Part shown: positions 18,691-33,251 of the stretch, in pieces
How the letters are laid out: each line of letters starts with the position of its first letter
Numbering within the stretch: the first letter of the stretch is position 1
Source of the DNA: Eutreptiella sp. 'Long Island Sound 2002'
Taxonomy: Eukaryota; Protista; Euglenida
Direction: 5' to 3'
DNA length: 64,000 bases
Assembly (NCBI GenBank): GCA_964036045.1
Contig: OZ038378.1
Span: 166,408,001-166,472,000, forward strand
Position numbers and translations under genes: made by a program
Notes under the pieces: generated by a model
The model's input: the letters and a program-made list of their open reading frames with translations, nothing else
The model's database searches: none
What the model was told of the DNA's origin: nothing

Positions 18691-19724
18691 ACCTAATACA
18701 TGTTGTATGACCATAAAACTATGGGCTATGCTCCTAGTGTACCCCGTATTACTCGGGTATATGCCCCTTTAGTGGGGAACCATGTCGTGGTGCGATATGC
18801 ACCTGGTGGCCATGTCACGACAGTATTGGGCATCAAACCTACGCCCACAATTGACGATCCACCATGCATATTGCTGCACTAGACGACCGGGTACCGAATT
18901 TCCGGTTTTTATCAAAATTTTCCACTAAAAAAAAACTTTTTTTTTGCCTTGTATATGTCAAGGACAAGACTTCCTGGGTCATGGGCCACTCTCTAATTGC
19001 TATACCGCACCCCTCACGCACGTTTCTTTACATTTCCCCCTCCTGTAGGCCCCAAGAGAATTCCCACAACGATTCTACTGTTGGCAATAGAACAGGTCAC
19101 GGTGTCCATCAAAGGTCACAACGTGGTGCTACGCTCTGTTGTTGCCCTATGGTTTCCTATCTCCTTGCAGTTGTTCAAAGAGTTCTGCCGGCAGGTCTTG
19201 GGGCTAATGCGCAGCTGCAGGCAGAAGTCCACCAATAATTATGCCGGACCGACATCAACACCGTCTAGCAGACCACTACAGTGTGATGGGGGCTTCTCCT
19301 GTCAGCAGTAGAACAAGTATGTCCTTGTGGAGAGGTGGCCCGGGCGTAGTACACCAGCATACAGAACGTGTCGCATGCTGGTAGAGTGTCACACATGTAC
19401 ATGTAATACACACTACTGATAGGACGCAACCCATCGCTCTGTATTCTTCAACCAGCACTAGAACGGTATTCCAATGGGGTAGACATGGATATATGTTCCA
19501 ATGTTTCCCAAAAAGGATACTAATGCGGAGGACGGGATACAAGTACCCGTGACAACATTATTCGTATGCTGACAAGAACACAAGAGGACAAGTATGTGTA
19601 GAATGGGACGGAAACCATATATCGACAAGGGCTGTGCCGTGGACCGCACTAGGGTATGACATCATTGCAGTGCAATGCAACATGAAGACAGGGAACATTC
19701 AATGAACAGATAAAGCTCGACAAC

Positions 19725-20585
19725 ATTGCACAACGTTGACACCTTGGGGCACCAATTGCACTTTCCCATCTTCTAACTTCTTTACATCGATGATGTCATT
19801 CAGAAGACTGAGCAGCGACGTGGAACTGGCATGGATCAACTCCAAAGGCTCCTGAAGGTCACTGGGAAGGTGCGGCGCCTCTATGCATTCCTCGGCCATG
19901 CCGTTAATGACATAAAGAGGGGTGCGAATCTCATGGGAGATGTTGGCGATTAATTGATCCTTCATCTGCATTTGCCTCAGGCGGTGCTCCGCCTGCTGGC
20001 ACTTGATTTCGGCCAGTTGCAGGCTCATGTCACGCACCAAGTTGCTGACTATATGTTCGTCGCTCTGTGTCCATGGCACAGCAGAGAGCGTTTCTGTTTG
20101 ACTGAACGGCCTGAACGATGAGCGGGGGACCATGCCCCCGGGTTTGAAGCTGCTGGCAGGGTCACCTGCCCAATATACATTTCGGGTAATGTATCCCCGA
20201 AACCAGATGCAAACTAAGCTACCTTCCTTGAGGTCTTTCGTTGTGGTGGACGCACTCTGCAGCAAGCAACCCCTTGCATGCTCACTGAACTTCTCTGCGT
20301 TGGGGTAGACATCCGGAAGATTTGTGGAACACAGCACCCCACCAGAGTGCTCCAAGGCAAAACTCACTAACTCAAGATTCTCCTCTTCAGTAGGGGTGAC
20401 GCCAAATCGATGCACCACACCATCGATCACACAGCAGGCTCCTATACATTTTAATGGATCAGAAACATTCCCGTTTTCGCCGGCGAATGCTGCCTGCGGG
20501 TTATGGGTCTCCTTCAGGCAGTGAAGCATTCTTCGCTGCTCCCGCCCAGCGCTTTCCTGCTGTTGTGCAAGTTCCAACCGCTGCT
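19725..20585 (-). pseudogene. Inverted partial duplicate (PHY + HisKA) of the phytochrome gene
   Basis: 861 bp colinear with 29579-30439 in the opposite orientation. The frame is still open, with 14 amino-acid differences over ~286 residues. It lacks PAS-GAF, HATPase and REC. Confidence 0.95.
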
Positions 20586-21991
20586 CTACTCATTGGTACC
20601 GTCTGTTTCTTTCCATCTATACGGCTCATACTATAGACTACTCCCGGTTATGCATTACCGCGGGCACATCACATGGCTACCAGTGTTCCAATTGGTAGCC
20701 GAGCGGGACTCTTCCCATTTGTGTTGTGTCCTTTTACTGCTGGTAGAAGAACTATTGCAGTCCGAGGGCGGAAGCCGTGGTTACGGAGGTTGATACCAAC
20801 CATGTTTATGATATAACATACCCTACTTAAGCTTAGTCATCCAAATACTGCCCGTGCAAGCCTGCATCAAGACACATCAAGGGTTAGCAAACGGGGTTCG
20901 TGTTCAGCTTGCCGCCTGAGGTTTGCTTTCACGCCGTCAAGCGCCTGTGGCGACACGGGTAGATATTAGTGAGCAAGAAATTCTGCAGATGTTTCCACGG
21001 GGGGGGGGGGGGCGTACACTTGTTGCCTCGGTACATCAGTTCAACAAAGCCCAGTACTTCAAAAACCCGGCCACTCGACGAGACATACTATTGTCAACAA
21101 CGGCAATGGCACACATGCCTACTGGTAGTTTGAGGGGACATTTTGTAGGGCACCCCACGCCTGACTCCCTGTATAGTGATGTGGCTCAGCATGTTACGGA
21201 CCTATAGGATGCATGGGTGTCCTTTACGGCCTCGACAAAGCACCTTGTACGTCAACACATGGGTTTTGAGTAGGTACGGTGCCCGTTGGACCTTTGCCGC
21301 AAGGAGGTTGAGGTTACTCCGTGGTACCCCTTAGCTATTAGGGATGTGCCTATCTCCGCAACCTTTGGATTTCACCAGGCCATGTACGGTGTACTTCAGT
21401 TGGCCAACAATTGTTCGGCAGCAGTCGTACCGATGTTAGGCGACATCACCATATACTACAGCTACTTGAAAATGTTGTACAGCTACTGGATGCAACCACT
21501 CACATTGCGCCATGTGCATGGCTCCGTTTGTCCCTTGTTCGGTATCTGGCATCCATACAAGTACTGTGTTAATCACATGTACAGTGTTTTCCTTCCATTC
21601 ATGGTGGCAATACGAAGGGTTCCTTCTAAACCCAACGGCAGGACAACTGTATGCATATCCTTCCCTTATTGTTAAGGAGCGTCTTATTTTGGCTATTTAC
21701 CTCTCCATAGCAGGTATACGTGCTCACTTACGTTGAAGCAGTAGATCACTTAAAGATAAGTTGTTAGCAGGGCTATACCGTATTGTTTTCCAATATGCCC
21801 CAGCCTTACTTCGTCTTGGTATTATGGTGCGTGATTGTTCGTGGTACCACCGTACACCACGTACCGGCAGGGCCGTCCTTAAGGATCCAGATTTTTTTTT
21901 TTTTGGTTAAGGACAGCCCTTAAGGACAGCCCCTAGAGGCCTTTTTGCCCTGGCCGAACGTGGGCCATGTCTACCCCCCGGCCCTGTTTTG

Positions 21992-22420: not shown

Positions 22421-23590
22421 TTGAATTTCTCCCGCCGCACTGGTGTGCGTTGGGTGGAAGCGATGTTCCACGAGCTGGATATTGTGCTAGAGAACTTGCC
22501 TGCTGTTGTGGAACACTTGCCCGAGTACATTAGTCATGAGGCTGACCTGGGGCAGAGGGAGAAGGCCGAGGGATTGTTCGATGCCCTTTCGCACCCCCTC
22601 TTCAAGTTGACGGCAGCCTTTTTTTGCGATGTTTTTGCTGTGGTTTGTGCCACAAGCAAGAAAGTTCAAGCGACCAAGGGGGCACGGGTCGCCGCCGTCC
22701 AGGGTTTGATGAACGTGATGTGCACACAACTGTTGTACACCATGCGTCATGTCATTCCACGGGGGTGGGAGGAATCGTTGGGTGTTGACGTAGGGAGTAG
22801 CATCATCAAGGGTAGCCGGATGAAGTTTCTTCGCAGTTTGATTGAGGACGTGCAGACACGATTCAAGCGAGCTGAGTGGGATGGTAGTGCTAACCTGGAG
22901 GATTGGGTTGAGGCAAGCTCGTGTTCGTGTGAGAGAGTTTTTAGCTACGTGACGGCTACGGACTTTGGCCAAACCACGGAGCGCATGTGTGAGACGCCGT
23001 GGGTAAGGTGCAATGGGGAGGCACCAGAGGATTGGGGTCCCTTTGAGGTTTTTGATGAGTTGCGCAAGACCCCTTTCCGCCCGCGCAAACGGAAGCAAGG
23101 GCATGCGGTTGAGGTGGAAGATGGTGGTTTGCTTGGGTTTGCGGCTTTCAAGGATTTGGCAGTTTCTTTGGAAGAGGATGCTGAGGCAGAGGTTCCGTTG
23201 GACATTCGAGATTTGTGGGTTGTCCCCAAGAGGGCTATTACACGTGACGCCAACATTGGTGATGTGTATGGGGTTGAGTTGGAGGGTGAGGACGAAGACA
23301 GTGAGGACGAGGATATGGAGCAGGCAGGTGCAGTTGCCAGTAGCTCCTCTTCTGACCTTCGTAACCCCTCAGCTGTCCCCTCCACCTTCTCTAACCCTGC
23401 CGCGCAGTTGGTGTTTCGGTATGATGTGGATGAGGCGGTGTTGAACGCAATGGAGAGGGGGAGGTTGCATGAGTGGACGAAGGTTGAGTTTAAGGCCATT
23501 TGTAGGAAGCATGGTTTGAGTGTGGGCGGGGGGAAGGGTGAGCTTATGGAGCGTGTCAAGGTGCACTTCAAGAGGTTGTACCAGCAGTAG
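22421..23590 (+). CDS. C-terminal half of hAT transposase with a terminal SAP-like domain
   Basis: GVRWVEA (hAT 'RW' box) and ASSCSCERVFSYV (hAT dimerisation/catalytic-E motif), then an acidic linker and WTKVEFKAICRKHGLSVGGGKGELMERVK (SAP consensus). The N-terminal catalytic part is missing. Confidence 0.75.
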   Translation: MNFSRRTGVRWVEAMFHELDIVLENLPAVVEHLPEYISHEADLGQREKAEGLFDALSHPLFKLTAAFFCDVFAVVCATSKKVQATKGARVAAVQGLMNVMCTQLLYTMRHVIPRGWEESLGVDVGSSIIKGSRMKFLRSLIEDVQTRFKRAEWDGSANLEDWVEASSCSCERVFSYVTATDFGQTTERMCETPWVRCNGEAPEDWGPFEVFDELRKTPFRPRKRKQGHAVEVEDGGLLGFAAFKDLAVSLEEDAEAEVPLDIRDLWVVPKRAITRDANIGDVYGVELEGEDEDSEDEDMEQAGAVASSSSSDLRNPSAVPSTFSNPAAQLVFRYDVDEAVLNAMERGRLHEWTKVEFKAICRKHGLSVGGGKGELMERVKVHFKRLYQQ

Positions 23591-27159: not shown

Positions 27160-28353
27160 ACGCGAGTTGGCGTCGGAGATGTGGTTTTAGCAGGGGTGCT
27201 GTGAAGCTTAAAATTCATTTTTGGGTCCGTGCACATTCCTGAAATTTTGTTGAGAAAAAGGGGGTGTCTGTGGTTCCCCCCAACCACCCTTTAGTAAGTT
27301 ACCCCAAAAAGGGAAAATTTACACCCCCAAGTTAGGATACAGTGATGACTGATATTCTTCTAATCTAGTATACATTTGAATGCCAGACGGTCATAGGGAG
27401 TGGAGAAGGAGAACGTGGTTGGTATGCAGGTAATCAGCCAAACACCGATCAAGGACCAAAGGATGTGAAGGGGTCGGGTACAAAGCACGTGAGGCGGTGA
27501 AGGTGTCTTTACACCACCTTGTTCAAAATGCCTTTTCACCTTTGATGGGCCGTCCAAAGAGAGGCAACGGCATTACGCACCACAAGTGAGCTAGAAAGGG
27601 CACTGCTTAAAGAGAGGAAGTGCACTGGAGGATGATGATGCTGATTGCAATTTTAGGGAGGATCCAAGCTGTGCAAGCCCATACATGCGGGTGTGCGTTG
27701 ATGACCCGGTAGCACCGATGCAGGGTGACGGTAAGGGATGCGCCACATGGCACAATACATGTGGACTGTGATTGCCACAGGATACACAGGTACAATTGGC
27801 TAGAAACTCAAGGATTTGACACGCATGGCACCACTGTAGTGTTTCCATGAACCAAGGTATCAAGATGATCAAGCTGCACTTCTCAAGAGATGAGCACTCA
27901 CGGGGTGCCATACATGTGGGCGATGGGTAGCCCGGTGATGGTGGCGGTGATTAATCACCATGTGCTGCAATTTGCTCTGACATTAAGGTCAAACAAGAAA
28001 CCTGTTGAGCCCGTTGACTTCGTGAACGGTGGGCGAACGATTGCCTAAGCTTCGCAAACCGGGAAAGGGTGAGAGCATCAACTGTCCTGACGTTGTAACA
28101 CAACAATGAGTTGATCCAAAGTCATAGGAAAAAGAGGAAGACAGCAGTGGGACTAGCCCAAGAGAGAGTCCGATCTAACCGATTGACCACTGCGCACGTA
28201 AGCATTTGAGCCTGGCAGTGGGACCACACACTGAACGTATGGTTTGTTGCAGCTGTAGCATACAGTCGGAGCTAGGAGTTGGAGCTCACAGTTTGTGCAA
28301 GAGTTGGATGGTGATTGTGGTCCACATTGGGACAAGGCTGTAGGACATATGCA

Positions 28354-28357
<4 letters not shown>

Positions 28358-28401
<44 letters not shown>

Positions 28402-28519
28402 TTTCCTTCTTCTTCGATTGGAAAAATTGTTTTCTACACTGTGAGTGGTTCTCAACAGCCCAATCTGGTCTACCGGTGGAAGCAACAGAAATATTCTTGT
28501 GGCTCTCTTGTGGTTTCAG
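28358..28519 (+). promoter_or_regulatory. (CT)n polypyrimidine tract and candidate 3' (trans- or cis-) splice acceptor of the phytochrome gene
   Basis: (CT)n at ~28358-28392 with further T/C-rich sequence; TTTCAG (AG 28518-19) lies 14 nt before ATG 28534. Confidence 0.5.
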
Positions 28520-28533
28520 GTTCTCCCAAGGCC

Positions 28534-31500
28534 ATGGAACCAGCCCACGAGGATGCATGTCAGTGGGCAGACGCTGTTTTGCTGTCCAGGCAGTACGAAA
28601 CAATTTCGACTGCCAAAAGAGAAGCCTATCGACGGAATTCTTTTTCACTAGAAGATCGCAAGCACACTTGTGCCCGAGAAAATATCCACAAGCCAAGCGC
28701 TGTGCAAGGCCATGGCTATCTTTTGGTGATGGAGAGGGCCACGCTTTCGGTTACCCAAGTCAGTGCAAACGTCCTTGACCTGGGCTATGAAATCAACTCT
28801 CTCCTTGGCACGTCTTTGATGGATGTGATTGGAGCAACAGCCTTCGACAACATCCAGACGACAATTGACATTCAAGAGTCCAAGCCAATGAGCAGTTTCC
28901 CTGTGGAATTCGGTGTTGGAGAACACAGAAAAACGTTTGCAAGCTCCTTCCATGTGCGTGGCACAAGTGCGTTTCTTGAGCTGGAACGTTACGTACCAGT
29001 CACTTCAAGAGGTGTTGATGCTGGAAATGTGCAAGTCCGATGCATGAGTCAGAAGCTGTTAACGGTCGAAAGCAATGTCGAAGGTTGCCAGCTTTTGACA
29101 CAAAGTGTTCAGAGCACAACGGGGTTTGACCGGGTAATGGTCTACATGTTTCACCCTGATCAACACGGTGAAGTCATTGCGGAGACCCTTCGACCTGATT
29201 CTGGGGTGGAGAGCCTCAAGGGGCTGCACTTCCCGGCACATGATATTCCGGAGCAGGCCAGGGCTTGCTTCGTCCACAACATCTACTCACACATCCCCCA
29301 TGTGAAGCATGACGAAATCCCGCTTGTCCCAGTCGATTGTCCCCACAGCATGGAACGTCCGGACATGACGCTGGTGAGCCTTCGATCCGTGGCCCCGGGG
29401 TGCACTCAATACTACCTCAACCTGGGTATTCAAGCATCCTTAGTGGTGTCTCTAGTGGTTGATGGCCAATTGTGGGGCTTGCTGATCTGCCATCATATGT
29501 CGCCAAAATTTGTCCCATTCTATGAAAGGGTTGCAGCCGCAATGGTCAGTGAAGTCTTGTCCCTGTTCATCAGCGTACAGCAGCGGTTGGAACTTGCACA
29601 GCAGCAGGAAAGCGCTGGACGGGCGCAGCAAAGAATGGTTCACTGCCTGAAGGAGACCCATGACCCGCAGGCAGCATTCGCCGGCGAAAACGGGAATGTT
29701 TCTGATCTATTAAAATGTACAGGGGCCTGCTGTGTGATCGATGGTGTGGTGCATCGATTTGGCGTCACCCCTACTGAAGAGGAGATTCTTGAGTTAGTGA
29801 GTTTTGCCTTGGAGCACTCTGGTGGGGTGCTGTGTTCCACAAATCTTCCGGATGTCTACCCCAACGCAGAGAAGTTCAGTGAGCATGCAAGGGGCTGCTT
29901 GCTGCAGAGCGCGTCCACCACAACGAAAGACCTCAAGGAAGGTAGCTTAGTTTGCATCTGGTTTCGGGGATACATTACCCGAAATGTATATTGGGCAGGT
30001 GACCCTGCCAGCAGCTTCAACCCCGGGGGCATGGTCCCCCGCTCATCGTTCAGGCCGTTCAGTCAAACAGAAACGCTCTCTGCTGTGCCATGGACACAGA
30101 GCGACGAGCATATAGTCAGCAACTTTGTGCGTGACATCAGCCTGCAACTGGCCGAAATCAAGTGCCAGCAGGCGGAGCACCGCCTGAGGCAAATGCAGAT
30201 GAAGGATCAATTAATCGCCAACATCTCCCATGAGATTCGCACCCCTCTTTATGTCATTAACGGCATGGCCGAGGAATGCATAGAGGCGCCGCACCTTCCC
30301 AGTGACCTTCAGGAGCCTGTGGAGTTGATCCATGCCAGTGGCACGTCGCTGCTCAGTCTTCTGAATGACATCATCGATGTAAAGAAGTTAGAAGATGGGA
30401 AGCTGCAATTGGTGCCCCAAGATGTCAACGTTGTGCAATTGGCGCGTTTCTGCCTGAAGATGTTCAGCAAGCAATTGAAGGCCAAGGGCCTGCTTGGGCA
30501 GCTGATCTACACCCCCTCCCTGGAGCATACAACTCTCAGTATCGACAAGACGCGGCTGCAGCAGCTGTACGTCAACCTCATCTCCAATGCACTCAAGTTC
30601 ACAAACACAGGCTCCATTACTGTGCGGCTAACGCACAGCCAAAGCCCGTCCGAGCTGACAGTGTCTGTTGAAGACACCGGCATTGGCATCAAGGACAGCG
30701 ACCTCCCCAAGCTCTTTGACAAGTTTGAGCAGGTCGACACCTCCGATAAGCGGGTGTTTCACGGGGCAGGCCTGGGGCTGTACATCGTGAAGCAGATCCT
30801 GGACCTCATGAATGGCAAGCTGGGGGTCCAATCGGAGTGGCAGAAGGGCTGTCAGTTCTGGTTCAAGGTCTGTGCCCCCTGCAGCTGTGAAAGCAACACC
30901 GCTTGGGCATCCCAGGAGCCATGCGAGGAAGTCGTCATCAAGCCATCGCCATCCCAAGACATGGAAGCATCCCGGGCCTCAACAACTGCCTTGGTGTCTG
31001 GATCCGAAAGCACAAGGTCGACGGTTGCCTGGGCGTCTGCCTCGAGATCCAGCTCGGAGCCCTCCTCGCTTGCTCGACATTGTGCTGATCCTCCACCGCG
31101 CCTGGCCCTCAAGCCGCTCCCTCTCACGCCGGTCCCCAGTCGGGCCCGGCCGAGTCCCAAATCTGCATTCAAGCGGATGTTCCGAGCGGTGTTTTCGACG
31201 CGCAGCTCCGATTCCTGTTCAACGCCCTCTTTGCCTTCCGAGACGCTGGTGCCCCAGGCTTCGACACCAATCTCTCCCTCAGCCCCTTCCAACATGGGCA
31301 TGCGGAAGAAGGCCAAGCAGAGGGTGGCACCGGAACCGCCACGGGCGTCGATTCCCATCCAAGTACGTTCAAGGGGAGGCTTACGCCGAAGAATCCTCGT
31401 GGCAGAAGACAACCCTGTGTTGCAGAAGGTCACCTTATCGATGCTGTCGCCCGTGGCAGATTGCGTCATCGTCCCGGATGGCGAAGACGTGCTGGAGAAG

Positions 31501-31791
31501 TTGGGCGAGTCCACGGCGTATGCATTAATTTTGATGGATTTGCAGATGCCTCGTCTGGATGGTGTCGAGACCACGAAAGCCGTGCGAGCCATTCCGCAGT
31601 ATGACCACATCCCCATTGTTGGCTTCACTGCCAGTTCCATCCGGAGCGAGTTGGAGACATGCAAAGCGGCGGGAATGATTGAGGTGCTCTCCAAAAACCT
31701 CCCCAGGGCACAGTTGCAATCGTTCGTCTCCAGGTACACACAGCCGGCACCGCAATCAAATGCTGTGTCGGAGCTATCTTCCCCAGCTTGA
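28534..31791 (+). CDS. Bacteriophytochrome-type hybrid histidine kinase (PAS-GAF-PHY-HisKA-HATPase_c-REC), ~1085 aa, intronless
   Basis: PAS entry CARENIHKPSAVQGHG (Cys codon 28669). GAF: GFDRVMVYMF, FPAHDIPEQAR (Asp 29242), LRSVAPGCTQY, LWGLLICHH. PHY tongue: WAGDP and PRSSF. Kinase: H-box ISHEIRTPL, N-box NLISNALKFT, G1 DTGIGI, G2 GAGLGL. Receiver: LVAEDN...LMDLQMP...FTA...SK. The likely start is ATG 28534, not the ORF-finder start at 28315. Confidence 0.95.
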   Translation: MEPAHEDACQWADAVLLSRQYETISTAKREAYRRNSFSLEDRKHTCARENIHKPSAVQGHGYLLVMERATLSVTQVSANVLDLGYEINSLLGTSLMDVIGATAFDNIQTTIDIQESKPMSSFPVEFGVGEHRKTFASSFHVRGTSAFLELERYVPVTSRGVDAGNVQVRCMSQKLLTVESNVEGCQLLTQSVQSTTGFDRVMVYMFHPDQHGEVIAETLRPDSGVESLKGLHFPAHDIPEQARACFVHNIYSHIPHVKHDEIPLVPVDCPHSMERPDMTLVSLRSVAPGCTQYYLNLGIQASLVVSLVVDGQLWGLLICHHMSPKFVPFYERVAAAMVSEVLSLFISVQQRLELAQQQESAGRAQQRMVHCLKETHDPQAAFAGENGNVSDLLKCTGACCVIDGVVHRFGVTPTEEEILELVSFALEHSGGVLCSTNLPDVYPNAEKFSEHARGCLLQSASTTTKDLKEGSLVCIWFRGYITRNVYWAGDPASSFNPGGMVPRSSFRPFSQTETLSAVPWTQSDEHIVSNFVRDISLQLAEIKCQQAEHRLRQMQMKDQLIANISHEIRTPLYVINGMAEECIEAPHLPSDLQEPVELIHASGTSLLSLLNDIIDVKKLEDGKLQLVPQDVNVVQLARFCLKMFSKQLKAKGLLGQLIYTPSLEHTTLSIDKTRLQQLYVNLISNALKFTNTGSITVRLTHSQSPSELTVSVEDTGIGIKDSDLPKLFDKFEQVDTSDKRVFHGAGLGLYIVKQILDLMNGKLGVQSEWQKGCQFWFKVCAPCSCESNTAWASQEPCEEVVIKPSPSQDMEASRASTTALVSGSESTRSTVAWASASRSSSEPSSLARHCADPPPRLALKPLPLTPVPSRARPSPKSAFKRMFRAVFSTRSSDSCSTPSLPSETLVPQASTPISPSAPSNMGMRKKAKQRVAPEPPRASIPIQVRSRGGLRRRILVAEDNPVLQKVTLSMLSPVADCVIVPDGEDVLEKLGESTAYALILMDLQMPRLDGVETTKAVRAIPQYDHIPIVGFTASSIRSELETCKAAGMIEVLSKNLPRAQLQSFVSRYTQPAPQSNAVSELSSPA

Positions 31792-32139
31792 TCCAAGCAT
31801 GGCATTGCGAAATGCCTTGTTACCCTATCTCACCCGCCCCACCCCTTCCCCCGCTCGTCAGAGCAAGGAAGGCCATGGAAGGCAGGTGGGCACACGTCGC
31901 TTCTTTGCAGCCCCCCTGTGGTATGCCAGAAGCGTATCTCTACCTGCCTTGCATCCAAATTGGTCACAGCCTCCCATCATGCAGCGTGCGCACTGTCAAG
32001 AGTGCGCACTACTGCTCTGTGGGTATGCAGCTTGGTTCAAAAAGTGAGCGTTCTTCATGGTGATGCTGAGACTCCATCAGTCTCTGATGGTCACCACCCA
32101 CCCCTGCCTACCCTGACTGTCCACGCAGCCTCTGTTTTT

Positions 32140-32320
32140 CACCACCGCAGTGTAGGGGGTAGTGGGCAGTGGGGCTACTTCTATACACCACCGCAGTGTA
32201 GGGGGTAGTGGGCAGTGGGTATCCTTCTACACACCACCGCAGTGTAGGGGGTAGTGGGCAGTGGGTATCATTCTACACACCACCGCAGTGTAGGGGGTAG
32301 TGGGCAGTGGGTATCCTTGA
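32140..32320 (+). repeat. 46-bp G-rich tandem repeat, 4 copies
   Basis: CACCACCGCAG recurs at 32140, 32186, 32232 and 32278; the unit contains GGGGGTAGTGGGCAGTGGG. Confidence 0.95.
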
Positions 32321-33251
32321 GTACACTGCAGGTGTGATGTGGCGTAAACCTTGTTGTCTGATCACTCTGTCTTCACACCTGCTGGACGACTGGGATCCTA
32401 CTGCATTTGATGATACCTTCCAGGGAAAATGTTAGATTAGGACAACATTGATGTGGACGAACCTCCCTCGTACCAAACATTTCCTTCAATTTTAAGGATG
32501 CTATGTGCCAAAATGTGTGCACCGGACACCGGCTGCAGGGGGGATTTTCTGCATGCTACATGCAGTGTGACTGTGCAACGCAGAGGTGAGACGGGGTGTC
32601 AACCGACACTGTGTTCTCTGTCGAGACTCACTCAAGACTGACAATGTTCGCATCAGGAGACCGTACAATTCGTGGATGTACCATGTTCTGTGTGCACAAG
32701 CGGCGCGCGCGAGGTGTGTGTACTGGGGTGATTTCGTGCACCTACCCACGTATTTGACAGTGAAGTTCATGTATTTCGAAGCTGTAAAAGGTATTACCAT
32801 TGCACATACTGCACTGCGTCCCCTTACAGTTTCACCAATGTCATTTTCATGGTTTCCTACAGGCATCACTGTGTGCCTGCCACTGTCACCTCCGTCTCCG
32901 AGTGTGGGCAGTACATGAGCATCGAGTACATGGCGCAGTACTGGCAGCGCGGCTGTGCAGGGAGCGCGACCTAGCACTTACGGGTAGGATGCAATTGGCG
33001 CCGACCACACGGCCGGCGCAGTGGCCCTCGACGCTCAAGAATGTTCTCCCGGTGGGCAAAATCACAGGACCCATGGGCAGTGGCCTCGGAGGTGCTGGTA
33101 GCAGAAAAAGGCAGTGCAGCCGGCACTACGACAGCGACTGGCGACTGCCTTTGGCGGTCAGAGGCGGCCCTGGGACACATTGCAGGTTGCCATGGACCAA
33201 GTCTGCTCGGTAGTGCGCAACTCGGGCTGATGTCCGGGGGTTTAGTATTGG

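What the first reader, a model, noticed from the sequence alone, without database searches (positions are those of the whole stretch)
28534..31791. Euglenid-type phytochrome with the invariant bilin His replaced by Cys: candidate new two-cysteine photosensor
Seen in sequence: the N-terminal biliverdin-type Cys is kept (C46, CARENIHKP, 28669). The GAF helix reads LRSVAPG-C-TQY. The Cys (29401) is exactly 53 residues after the DIP Asp (29242), the same spacing as D207 to H260 in Deinococcus BphP, and the preceding canonical GAF-Cys site (Cph1 C259) is Gly. By eye, Dr Y216, R222 and S274 are also changed (F, S, V), while Y176, D207, R254, Y263, H290 and the PRxSF tongue are kept. Established knowledge: in tandem-cysteine (CH to CC) phytochromes, a Cys at this His position forms a second thioether to the bilin and gives blue/violet-shifted states. 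Inference: pairing a BphP-type PAS Cys with a Cys at the His site could give a dual-linked biliverdin photocycle that I do not know to be described. Alternatively the protein is a bilin-poor or light-independent kinase. The kinase and receiver motifs look intact.
Basis: partly seen in the sequence, partly recalled or inferred. Interest (0 to 1): 0.88.

Follow-up and report, generated by a model that had tools for sequence, protein, structure and literature searches.

The report
Euglena phytochrome with cysteine replacing histidine
A Euglena-type alga expresses a family of bacterial-style light-sensor kinases in which the histidine that normally sits over the pigment has been replaced by a conserved cysteine. 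This may let the sensor form a second bond to its pigment and respond to violet/blue as well as far-red light, but no spectrum has been measured.

Summary
Window 28534-31791(+) is an intact, intronless 1085-aa phytochrome hybrid kinase (PAS_2-GAF-PHY-HisKA-HATPase-REC).

- **Register:** three independent alignments, bridged to DrBphP numbering, put Cys290 (TGC, 29401-29403) at His260. They also place Cys46 at the BphP Cys24 site and Gly289 at the Cph1 Cys259 site.
- **Not an error or private allele:** the codon is TGC in five paralogous loci of one assembly, in an MMETSP-linked cluster and in environmental contigs.
- **Single origin:** a tree shows one His-to-Cys change at the base of an eight-member clade. 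The Cys is kept across more than 1 substitution per site, and His-keeping paralogs are basal.
- **Selection:** domains have dN/dS 0.09-0.31; the Ser/Pro linker has 0.92.
- **Host and expression:** an environmental mRNA of the near-identical copy 75 kb upstream starts with the last 15 nt of the Euglena gracilis spliced leader. RNA-like contigs match the window's own allele.
- **Co-changes:** the His-to-Cys change arose together with L264Y and S257A, and S274 is Val. Outside this family, His/Tyr264 and Val274 also accompany Cys260, mostly in tandem-cysteine cyanobacterial phytochromes.
- **Classification:** it is not a TCCP, because there is no CC dyad and it sits in a different clade.

Whether Cys290 forms a second bilin linkage is untested. 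I rate it a new variant of a known kind, interest about 0.62. The scan had noted this gene and its paralogs before.

The parts
28518..28519 (+). AG acceptor for spliced-leader trans-splicing. The mRNA body starts at 28520, giving a 14-nt 5' UTR before the ATG.
   Evidence: The environmental mRNA contig L004 starts with GTCTATTTTTTTTCG, the last 15 nt of the E. gracilis SL (PMC6242988), and then matches the genome from 28520. The genome reads TTTCAG|GTTCTCC. L004 is the transcript of the near-identical copy L003.
28534..31791 (+). Intronless coding sequence of a 1085-aa phytochrome hybrid histidine kinase, stop codon included.
   Evidence: ORF and translation; six Pfam domains; RNA contigs collinear with the DNA and no joints inside the CDS.
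28669..28671 (+). Cys46, the BphP-type N-terminal ('PAS-knot') bilin-binding cysteine, in the motif C-A-R-E-N-I-H.
   Evidence: Aligns with DrBphP Cys24. Kept in all family members that cover the site except the F-box/LRR fusion P0009/P0140.
28669..28986 (+). PAS_2 domain (aa 46-151).
   Evidence: Pfam PF08446, E = 7.5e-13.
29086..29523 (+). GAF bilin-pocket domain (aa 185-330). Kept: Y204, F233, DIP at 237-239, R284, Y293, H320. Changed: F246 (Y216), S252 (R222), A287 (S257), V304 (S274).
   Evidence: Pfam PF01590; residue map.
29398..29403 (+). Gly289 (GGG, the Cph1 Cys259 site) and Cys290 (TGC, the His260 site): the focal substitution.
   Evidence: TGC is also found in loci L001, L002, L003 and L006. 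Contig 26 of run X9 (29205-29436) has no differences from the window.
29413..29415 (+). Tyr294 (the Leu264 site). It is one helical turn after Cys290 and changed on the same branch as His-to-Cys.
   Evidence: Invariant Tyr in the Cys clade, Leu in the basal His paralogs and in 87% of bacterial sequences. Outside the family, His/Tyr264 occurs in 7 of 8 Cys260 proteins against 0 of 233 His260 proteins.
29620..30120 (+). PHY domain (aa 363-529) with the tongue motifs W-A-G (487-489), PRSSF (502-506) and PW..E.
   Evidence: Pfam PF00360, E = 3.9e-26; motif positions.
30199..30870 (+). Histidine-kinase core: HisKA with the H-box S-H-E-I-R-T-P (His566), and HATPase_c with the N, G1 (DTGIGI), F and G2 (GAGLGL) boxes.
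   Evidence: Pfam PF00512 and PF02518; motifs; dN/dS 0.18 against L002.
30901..31368 (+). Ser/Pro/Ala-rich low-complexity linker (aa 790-945).
   Evidence: Composition; dN/dS 0.92 against L002, i.e. nearly neutral.
31393..31722 (+). Receiver domain (aa 954-1063) with E958-D959, the phospho-acceptor Asp1002 (LILMDLQMP), T1032 and K1054.
   Evidence: Pfam PF00072, E = 4.7e-15; motifs; dN/dS 0.21.
19725..20589 (-). Inverted partial copy (PHY-HisKA) of the same gene. It belongs to the gene family's local duplication history, not to the sensor itself.
   Evidence: 865 nt, 97.3% identical to CDS positions 1042-1906 with no gaps; Pfam PHY + HisKA in ORF 19699-20577(-).

Best explanation
**What is shown.** This is an expressed, selectively maintained member of a euglenid-specific phytochrome family with bacteriophytochrome-like architecture. 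Cys46 sits at the BphP attachment site. The histidine that in all characterised BphPs lies over the B/C rings (His260) was replaced once, in the ancestor of an eight-member paralog clade, by Cys290. Neighbouring changes accompanied it: L264Y and S257A on the same branch, plus S274V.

**What is inferred.**
- Cys46 carries a bilin, most likely biliverdin.
- Cys290 acts as a second nucleophile that adds reversibly to the bilin, at C10 as reported for tandem-cysteine phytochromes. This would give a near-UV/violet/blue-absorbing state that light interconverts with a red/far-red-absorbing state.
- The signal passes through the intact PHY tongue to the HisKA/HATPase core and on to the fused receiver by phosphorelay.
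For: - **Register and architecture:**. An AlphaFold model (pLDDT 83) matches Pr-state BphP photosensory modules with TM 0.82-0.86, and residue 290 lies in helix 288-296.
- **Photochemical residues kept across the Cys clade:** Y176, F203, D207-I-P, Y263 and H290 are all kept, and the N-terminal Cys is kept wherever the sequence covers it. The diverged F-box/LRR paralog P0009 has lost them, which shows what relaxed constraint looks like in this family.
- **Conservation of the Cys:** TGC in five loci. There is a single origin on a 100/99-supported branch, and the Cys is retained over more than 1 substitution per site.
- **Purifying selection:** GAF dN/dS is 0.09 against L001. Against L002, the photosensory module is 0.31, the kinase 0.18, the receiver 0.21 and the linker 0.92.
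- **Expression:** a spliced-leader-capped mRNA of the sister copy. RNA-run contigs cover only the transcribed span. Two contigs from a cultured-organism run that is probably RNA match the window allele exactly where the sister copy differs.
- **Parallel with tandem-cysteine phytochromes:** TCCP signature residues include Cys260, His264 and Val274 (PMC11880981). The window has Cys260, Tyr264 and Val274.
- **Association outside the family:** His/Tyr264 occurs in 7 of 8 Cys260 proteins against 0 of 233 His260 proteins. Val274 occurs in 6 of 8 against 18 of 233.
- **Literature:** the TCCP second Cys attaches at C10 (PMC8707292). Adding the tandem Cys to a dual-Cys BphP that keeps its PAS-knot Cys gave TCCP-like cycles, and its biliverdin adduct gave a UV/far-red cycle (PMC11880981).
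Against: - No spectrum, zinc blot or structure exists. Second-linkage formation is inferred from position and analogy only.
- In known tandem-Cys proteins the bilin hangs on the adjacent GAF Cys259. Here it would hang on the N-terminal Cys, so the geometry could differ.
- PMC11880981 reports that introducing the cysteines into ordinary BphP or Cph1 templates mostly gave poor binders.
- Pocket anchors are missing: R222 (invariant in all 241 bacterial sequences tabulated for it) is Ser/Thr/Gly in the whole family. S257 is Ala and S274 is Val. R254 is Gln in the 89%-identical paralog group.
- Two nested paralogs replaced the Cys by Asn and Phe, so the site is not indispensable in every copy.
- The 264/274 association rests on few independent lineages. 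Six of the eight outside Cys260 proteins are one TCCP clade.
- The organism's bilin supply (heme oxygenase, bilin reductases) was not checked.
Confidence: 0.4

Rival explanations
1. It is a single-linkage phytochrome with retuned chemistry. A bilin is bound only through Cys46. Cys290 is a small polar replacement for His260 that changes chromophore protonation, hydrogen bonding or spectral tuning, or gives poor Pfr formation or more fluorescence, without ever bonding to the bilin. The result is a modified red/far-red cycle that drives the kinase.
For: - All residues needed for an ordinary cycle are present: D207, Y176, Y263, H290 and PRSSF.
- Other non-His residues occur naturally at this site in BphP-like proteins: Tyr in 5 of 247, and Asn and Phe within the family. 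The site therefore tolerates replacement without a thiol.
- From my own recall, not checked here: His260 substitutions in DrBphP and Cph1 still bind bilin but alter protonation and photoconversion.
Against: - The Cys specifically, with codon TGC, is retained in six paralog lineages over long divergence.
- The Cys co-occurs with the same 264 and 274 changes that accompany the reactive Cys of TCCPs.
Confidence: 0.3
2. It is a bilin-poor or light-independent sensor kinase. The remodelled pocket no longer holds a bilin stably, or holds another ligand. The module instead senses something else, for example redox state through Cys290 or another tetrapyrrole, or acts constitutively.
For: - Pocket residues are lost: R222 in the whole family, S257 and S274 in the Cys clade, and R254 in the P0002 group. 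That these are propionate contacts is my own recall of DrBphP structures, not a result of those calls.
- Site 260 varies across paralogs: C, N, F and H.
- One paralog lineage (P0009) has clearly abandoned photochemical residues.
- A 2026 transcriptome study saw essentially no red-light response of E. gracilis transcripts annotated as phytochrome, about 1.07-1.15-fold (PMC13422297).
Against: - The attachment Cys, DIP, Y176, Y263, H290 and the tongue motifs are strictly kept, with GAF dN/dS of 0.09-0.30. That pattern is hard to explain without a bilin and its photoconversion.
- R254 is kept in the window copy.
Confidence: 0.2
3. It is an artefact or a dead gene. The Cys codon would be a sequencing or assembly error or a private allele, or the locus would be an unexpressed retrocopy or pseudogene.
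For: - The gene is intronless in a genome that other scan notes describe as intron-rich.
- There are many near-identical copies and a truncated inverted fragment 9 kb upstream.
- One 97%-identical copy (P0001) changes reading frame just before the Cys46 motif.
Against: - The same codon is found in five loci, and the Cys in JGI environmental contigs.
- The ORF is intact, with domain-wise purifying selection against a neutral linker.
- A spliced-leader-capped mRNA of the sister copy exists, and contigs from a cultured-organism run that is probably RNA match this allele.
Confidence: 0.02

Closest known systems
Bacteriophytochromes (BphP; e.g. DrBphP, PsBphP 8u4x, RpBphP3 4r70) and hybrid-kinase BphPs with a fused receiver
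   Same: - PAS_2-GAF-PHY-HisKA-HATPase(-REC) architecture.
- N-terminal Cys at the Cys24 site, and no GAF Cys at position 259.
- DIP, Y176, R254, Y263, H290 and the PRxSF tongue are present.
- These are the best sequence hits (31-35% identity, E about 1e-66) and the best fold hits (TM 0.82-0.86).
   Different: - His260 is Cys.
- R222 is Ser, Y216 is Phe, S257 is Ala, S274 is Val and L264 is Tyr.
- It is encoded in a eukaryote (euglenid) and trans-spliced.
- It forms a separate clade with a long stem of 0.94 substitutions per site.
[quoted passage not shown]
   Same: - Cys at the His260 position.
- Val at 274 and an aromatic or His residue at 264.
- In TCCPs this Cys makes a second thioether, reported at C10, and gives violet/blue-absorbing states (PMC11880981, PMC8707292).
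   Different: - There is no CC dyad: position 259 is Gly, so the primary attachment would have to be the N-terminal Cys.
- Positions 264, 272 and 288 are Tyr, Ser and Ile instead of His, Leu/Ile/Met and Ser.
- It is not in the TCCP clade.
- The chromophore would probably be biliverdin rather than phycocyanobilin.
Three-cysteine phytochrome Le3CP and engineered 3CP variants of dual-Cys bacteriophytochromes (PMC11880981)
   Same: They combine a PAS-knot Cys with a Cys at position 260. The biliverdin adduct of an engineered FiDCB 3CP variant gave a UV/far-red cycle.
   Different: They also keep the canonical GAF Cys259. In Le3CP the PAS-knot Cys was dispensable. Here the PAS-knot Cys would be the only primary attachment site.
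Uncharacterised bacterial metagenomic BphPs P0039 (HWE-kinase type) and P0265
   Same: They have the same arrangement: N-terminal Cys, a non-Cys residue at 259 and Cys at 260. P0265 also has Tyr264.
   Different: They keep R222. They are unrelated lineages, each an independent origin. They are single metagenomic cluster representatives with no functional data.

Membership tests
Phytochrome superfamily (knotted PAS-GAF-PHY photosensory module) | PAS_2, GAF and PHY domains in that order | tested here: met
   Pfam hits are all above the gathering scores. The fold matches BphP photosensory modules with TM 0.82-0.86.
Phytochrome superfamily (knotted PAS-GAF-PHY photosensory module) | Conserved pocket and tongue residues (Y176, D207-I-P, R254, Y263, H290, W-G/A-G, PRxSF) | tested here: met
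   Y204, D237-I-P, R284, Y293, H320, WAG at 487-489 and PRSSF at 502-506.
Phytochrome superfamily (knotted PAS-GAF-PHY photosensory module) | Covalent bilin binding and reversible photoconversion | not testable with these tools
   Needs recombinant protein and spectroscopy.
Bacteriophytochrome type (biliverdin on the N-terminal Cys) | Cys at the DrBphP Cys24 site and no Cys at GAF position 259 | tested here: met
   Cys46 in C-A-R-E-N-I-H; Gly289.
Bacteriophytochrome type (biliverdin on the N-terminal Cys) | Conserved His260 and Arg222 in the pocket | tested here: not met
   Cys290 and Ser252. The bacterial background is His in 233 of 247 and Arg in all 241 tabulated sequences.
Tandem-cysteine phytochromes (TCCP/TCEP) | Cys-Cys dyad at positions 259-260 | tested here: not met
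   Gly289-Cys290. Only the second Cys of the dyad is present.
Tandem-cysteine phytochromes (TCCP/TCEP) | TCCP signature residues Cys260, His264, Leu/Ile/Met272, Val274 and Ser288 (PMC11880981) | tested here: inconclusive
   Cys260 and Val274 match. Position 264 is Tyr, as in the TCCP-like protein P0030. Positions 272 and 288 are Ser and Ile, which do not match.
Tandem-cysteine phytochromes (TCCP/TCEP) | Placement in the TCCP clade | tested here: not met
   The euglenid family is a separate clade with 100/100 support. The TCCPs (P0015, P0028, P0062) group with cyanobacterial sequences. No TCEP sequences were available to include.
Dual-Cys bacteriophytochromes (DCB) | PAS-knot Cys plus the canonical GAF Cys259, with His260 kept | tested here: not met
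   Position 259 is Gly and position 260 is Cys.
Hybrid two-component histidine kinase | H-box His; N, G1, F and G2 boxes; receiver with an acidic pair, phospho-acceptor Asp, Thr and Lys | tested here: met
   SHEIRTP (His566), NLISNALKF, DTGIGI, FDKFEQ, GAGLGL; E958-D959, D1002, T1032, K1054. The Pfam models are covered nearly end to end. Catalytic activity was not tested.

The most novel reading that the evidence does not exclude
The euglenid Cys clade would be a natural new class of dual-linkage phytochrome. Biliverdin is attached through the N-terminal BphP cysteine. A second, light-reversible thioether forms from the cysteine at the His260 site to C10. This would give a near-UV/violet to far-red photocycle in a eukaryote. 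It would have arisen independently of cyanobacterial TCCPs and algal TCEPs, but with convergent helper substitutions (Tyr/His264, Val274).
Probability: 0.35. Interest if true: 0.8.

Novelty: new variant of a known kind. Interest (0 to 1): 0.62.

Why it matters
- **An uncharacterised lineage.** I found no characterised phytochrome from euglenids. The only mention was transcripts auto-annotated as 'phytochrome' in a 2026 E. gracilis expression study (PMC13422297). This locus shows that a Euglena-type alga carries at least nine diverged phytochrome-like genes with no close relatives elsewhere among 1.84 billion cluster representatives.
- **A natural experiment on His260.** Most of these genes replace one of the most conserved pocket residues by Cys. 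That bears on how second-cysteine colour tuning evolves, and whether it can work from a biliverdin/N-terminal-Cys scaffold.
- **Possible applications.** A biliverdin-based sensor that switches between violet/blue and far-red would interest optogenetics, because biliverdin is available in animal cells.
- **Easy to test.** The question can be settled with one recombinant expression experiment.

Tried and rejected
- **Misregister:** rejected. Pairwise HMMER, MAFFT and a phmmer-anchored alignment of about 280 sequences all agree, and the DrBphP numbering bridge checks out at C24, D207 and H260.
- **Read error or private allele:** rejected.
- **Pseudogene or silent retrocopy:** rejected on dN/dS and RNA evidence.
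- **TCCP or DCB membership:** rejected.
- **Rfam scan of the window:** nothing found.
- **Neighbouring ORFs of 250 aa or more:** only a SAP-domain ORF and the inverted phytochrome fragment have Pfam hits.
- **Heme oxygenase or bilin reductase in this genome:** nothing usable. No tool searches this assembly, the scan notes had nothing relevant, and a paper search returned zero.
- **Primary papers:** the TCCP paper (PMC7212627) and a Rockwell/Lagarias review (PMC5483197) are not held. TCCP facts therefore come from PMC11880981 and PMC8707292.
- **Geometry of Cys290 relative to a bilin:** could not be measured, because model coordinates are not exposed and no ligand was modelled.
- **Other eukaryotic phytochromes:** no fungal, diatom, glaucophyte or plant sequences were placed in the tree. 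None appeared among the best hits and I did not type sequences from memory. The origin of the family (bacterial transfer or ancient eukaryotic lineage) is left open.


Full report
**1. What is in the sequence**

Window 28534-31791(+) is one uninterrupted ORF of 1085 codons. Pfam finds PAS_2 (46-151), GAF (185-330), PHY (363-529), HisKA (556-622), HATPase_c (671-779) and Response_reg (954-1063). All are above the curated thresholds and nearly full length. The kinase and receiver motifs are present:
- H-box SHEIRTP, and the N, G1, F and G2 boxes
- receiver E958-D959, D1002, T1032 and K1054

Residues 790-945 are a Ser/Pro/Ala-rich linker. The stated codon positions are correct: Cys46 is TGT at 28669-28671, Asp237 is at 29242, and Cys290 is TGC at 29401-29403.

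**2. Register of the cysteine**

Three alignments agree.
- phmmer alignments to solved bacteriophytochromes put the Cys opposite the conserved pocket His (PGCTQY against PIHCQY in 8u4x and PTHLEY in 4r70).
- MAFFT with paralogs and three named bacterial BphPs gives the same column.
- I transferred DrBphP numbering through Deinococcus deserti BphP (P0083), aligned to DrBphP chain 8sgk_A. Chain index minus 14 reproduces C24, D207, H260 and H290.

The resulting map is:

| Window | DrBphP |
|---|---|
| C46 | C24 |
| Y204 | Y176 |
| F233 | F203 |
| D237 | D207 |
| F246 | Y216 |
| S252 | R222 |
| R284 | R254 |
| G289 | M259 (Cph1 C259 site) |
| C290 | H260 |
| Y293 | Y263 |
| S302 | S272 |
| V304 | S274 |
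| H320 | H290 |

PRSSF is kept. An AlphaFold model built on the family alignment (pLDDT 83, pTM 0.78) places residue 290 in helix 288-296. Its best structural matches are Pr-state BphP photosensory modules (TM 0.82-0.86).

**3. Host, transcript and copies**

- A 4456-nt environmental contig (L004) begins with GTCTATTTTTTTTCG, the last 15 nt of the Euglena gracilis spliced leader as printed in PMC6242988 and PMC5654406. It then matches the genome from 28520, directly after a TTTCAG acceptor and 14 nt before the ATG. The organism is therefore a Euglena-type euglenid, and ATG 28534 is the first AUG of the mature mRNA.
- L004 is codon-for-codon the transcript of a second 1085-aa copy, L003. L003 is 97.8% identical in nucleotides and lies on the same 908,903-bp contig. 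An earlier scan note places a 3258-nt phytochrome gene about 75 kb upstream of this window.
- When public runs are laid on the window, three runs cover only about 28.6-32.0 kb. A fourth covers the flanks too. There is no joint inside the CDS, so the gene is transcribed and intronless.
- Two contigs of a cultured-organism run whose record marks it only as probably RNA (30500-30841 and 30812-31109) match the window exactly where L003 differs. The X9 contig at 29205-29436 covers the Cys codon with no differences. The window's own copy therefore also appears to be expressed.
- The only unlisted difference in X2 record 10 (29041-29429, from that same run) is at 29406, not in the Cys codon.

**4. 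A family, and one origin of the Cys**

- All close relatives come from one ENA assembly, ERZ25074135. There are also an MMETSP transcript and JGI environmental contigs.
- An exhaustive HMMER scan of 1.84 billion cluster representatives finds only seven close clusters. There is then a gap to bacterial BphPs at about 34% identity.
- A maximum-likelihood tree makes the family monophyletic (100/100) on a long stem.
- The His-keeping paralogs are basal: P0007, P0006/P0141, and the F-box/LRR fusion P0009.
- An eight-member clade (100/99) carries Cys in six members. Asn (P0005) and Phe (P0142) occur in two nested tips next to the Cys-bearing P0004.
- Codons are TGC in the window and in L001, L002, L003 and L006. 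They are AAT in L007, and CAC in the His copies L005 and L008.
- dN/dS against the 89% paralog is 0.31 (photosensory module), 0.18 (kinase), 0.21 (receiver) and 0.92 (linker). Against the 50% paralog, the GAF domain gives 0.09.

The Cys is therefore not an error, not a private allele and not neutral.

**5. What changed with it**

- Columns invariant in the Cys clade but different in both the basal His paralogs and the bacterial consensus include H260C, L264Y and S257A. Also on the list are P50N and G55S next to the attachment Cys, and three further GAF positions.
- S274 is Val in most of the clade.
- R222 is Ser/Thr/Gly in the entire family, although it is Arg in all 241 bacterial sequences tabulated for it.
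- The 89% paralog group also has R254Q.
- The residues tied to photoconversion stay fixed in the Cys clade: Y176, F203, DIP, Y263, H290 and the N-terminal Cys. P0009 has lost most of them, which serves as an internal picture of decay.

**6. Comparison with what is known**

- PMC11880981 states that TCCPs and algal TCEPs independently gained a Cys at this position. It also states that they form second thioether linkages with blue-violet/yellow-orange cycles, and that TCCP signatures are Cys260, His264, Leu/Ile/Met272, Val274 and Ser288.
- PMC8707292 places the TCCP second linkage at C10.
- In my pool of 247 non-family phytochromes, the site is His in 233, Tyr in 5 and Cys in 9. Of the nine Cys: six are TCCP-type CC dyads, one is a misaligned ordinary Cys-His, and two are bacterial BphPs with an N-terminal Cys and X-Cys (P0039, P0265).
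- Outside the family, His/Tyr264 accompanies Cys260 in 7 of 8 proteins and His260 in 0 of 233. Val274 occurs in 6 of 8 against 18 of 233.
- These counts are inflated by shared ancestry within TCCPs. As independent lineages, three of four Cys260 lineages have an aromatic or His residue at 264: TCCP, P0265 and the euglenid clade, but not P0039.
- The window protein is not a TCCP (Gly at 259, different clade) and not a DCB.
- The nearest described constructs are three-Cys proteins. The natural one, Le3CP, does not need its PAS-knot Cys. An engineered FiDCB three-Cys variant gave a UV/far-red cycle with biliverdin.
- I found no description of a natural protein with a PAS-knot Cys and Cys260 but no Cys259. 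I also found no characterised euglenid phytochrome. One 2026 study lists auto-annotated 'phytochrome' transcripts in E. gracilis with negligible red-light response.

**7. Reading**

Shown:
- an expressed, selected euglenid phytochrome-type hybrid kinase with Cys at the His260 site
- a single origin of that Cys, with co-substitutions on the same branch

Inferred:
- a bilin on Cys46
- reversible addition of Cys290 to the bilin, giving a short-wavelength state
- phosphorelay output

I put about 0.4 on this full reading. I put 0.3 on a single-linkage, retuned phytochrome and 0.2 on a bilin-poor or light-independent kinase. The loss of R222, S257 and S274 is the main reason for that last figure. 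Artefact gets about 0.02. The remaining share, under 0.1, is left for readings not listed here.

**8. Verdict**

It is a new variant of a known kind and can be tested with one expression experiment. This gene, its neighbouring copy and the fusion paralog had already been noted by the scan on this genome.

Noticed in passing
window 19725-20589 (-): An inverted 865-nt copy of the PHY-HisKA part of the gene. It is 97.3% identical to CDS positions 1042-1906 with no gaps and still has an open 292-aa ORF. It is also called as a protein (P0127) in the public assembly.
   Followed up: partly
L003:3001-6258 (same 908,903-bp contig; an earlier scan note places a 3258-nt phytochrome gene about 75 kb upstream of the window): A second full 1085-aa copy with 37 nucleotide differences across the CDS. 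The spliced-leader-capped environmental mRNA L004 is identical to it in all 1085 codons.
   Followed up: yes
window 32138-32354: A 217-nt stretch of the 3' region is absent from the sister copy L003, from the mRNA contig L004 and from contigs of all four runs. It is a difference between copies, not an intron.
   Followed up: partly
window 32376-32700: Very high contig depth (up to about 5700 in run X1), with many loose ends. This is a high-copy dispersed repeat just downstream of the gene. Related repeats lie at about 62.3-63.9 kb.
   Followed up: no
window 28346-28404: A (CT)n microsatellite about 115 nt upstream of the spliced-leader acceptor. Reads appear cut there.
   Followed up: no
P0001 (97% copy on a 372,170-bp contig), region homologous to window ~28660-28685: This copy changes reading frame just before the CARENIH motif, next to an A-run. 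Its called protein therefore starts in another frame. It is either a homopolymer assembly error or a frameshifted allele.
   Followed up: no
P0003, P0008, P0004, P0005 (loci L001, L006, L007): In this subclade the tongue motif PRxSF reads ARxDF (Pro to Ala and Ser to Asp). P0004 and P0005 are photosensory-module-only proteins without a kinase.
   Followed up: no
whole euglenid family (P0001-P0009, P0141-P0143): Arg222 is Arg in all 241 bacterial sequences tabulated for it, but it is Ser/Thr/Gly in every family member, including those that keep His260. The P0002 group also has R254Q and G259E.
   Followed up: partly
P0039 and P0265 (bacterial metagenomic proteins): Two unrelated bacterial BphP-like proteins have the same arrangement: N-terminal Cys, non-Cys at 259 and Cys at 260. 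Five others (P0075, P0152, P0161, P0195, P0237) have Tyr at the His260 site.
   Followed up: partly
L005:3791-4111: In the His-keeping paralog P0006, the receiver domain is called as a separate ORF about 100 nt after the kinase ORF. This suggests an intron, a frameshift or a split gene in that copy.
   Followed up: no
window 22421-23590 (+): A 389-aa ORF ending in a SAP DNA-binding domain. It is the only other long ORF (250 aa or more) in the window with a Pfam hit.
   Followed up: no
L007:1-3742: A reverse-transcriptase (RVT_1) ORF lies directly upstream of the Asn260 paralog P0005.
   Followed up: no
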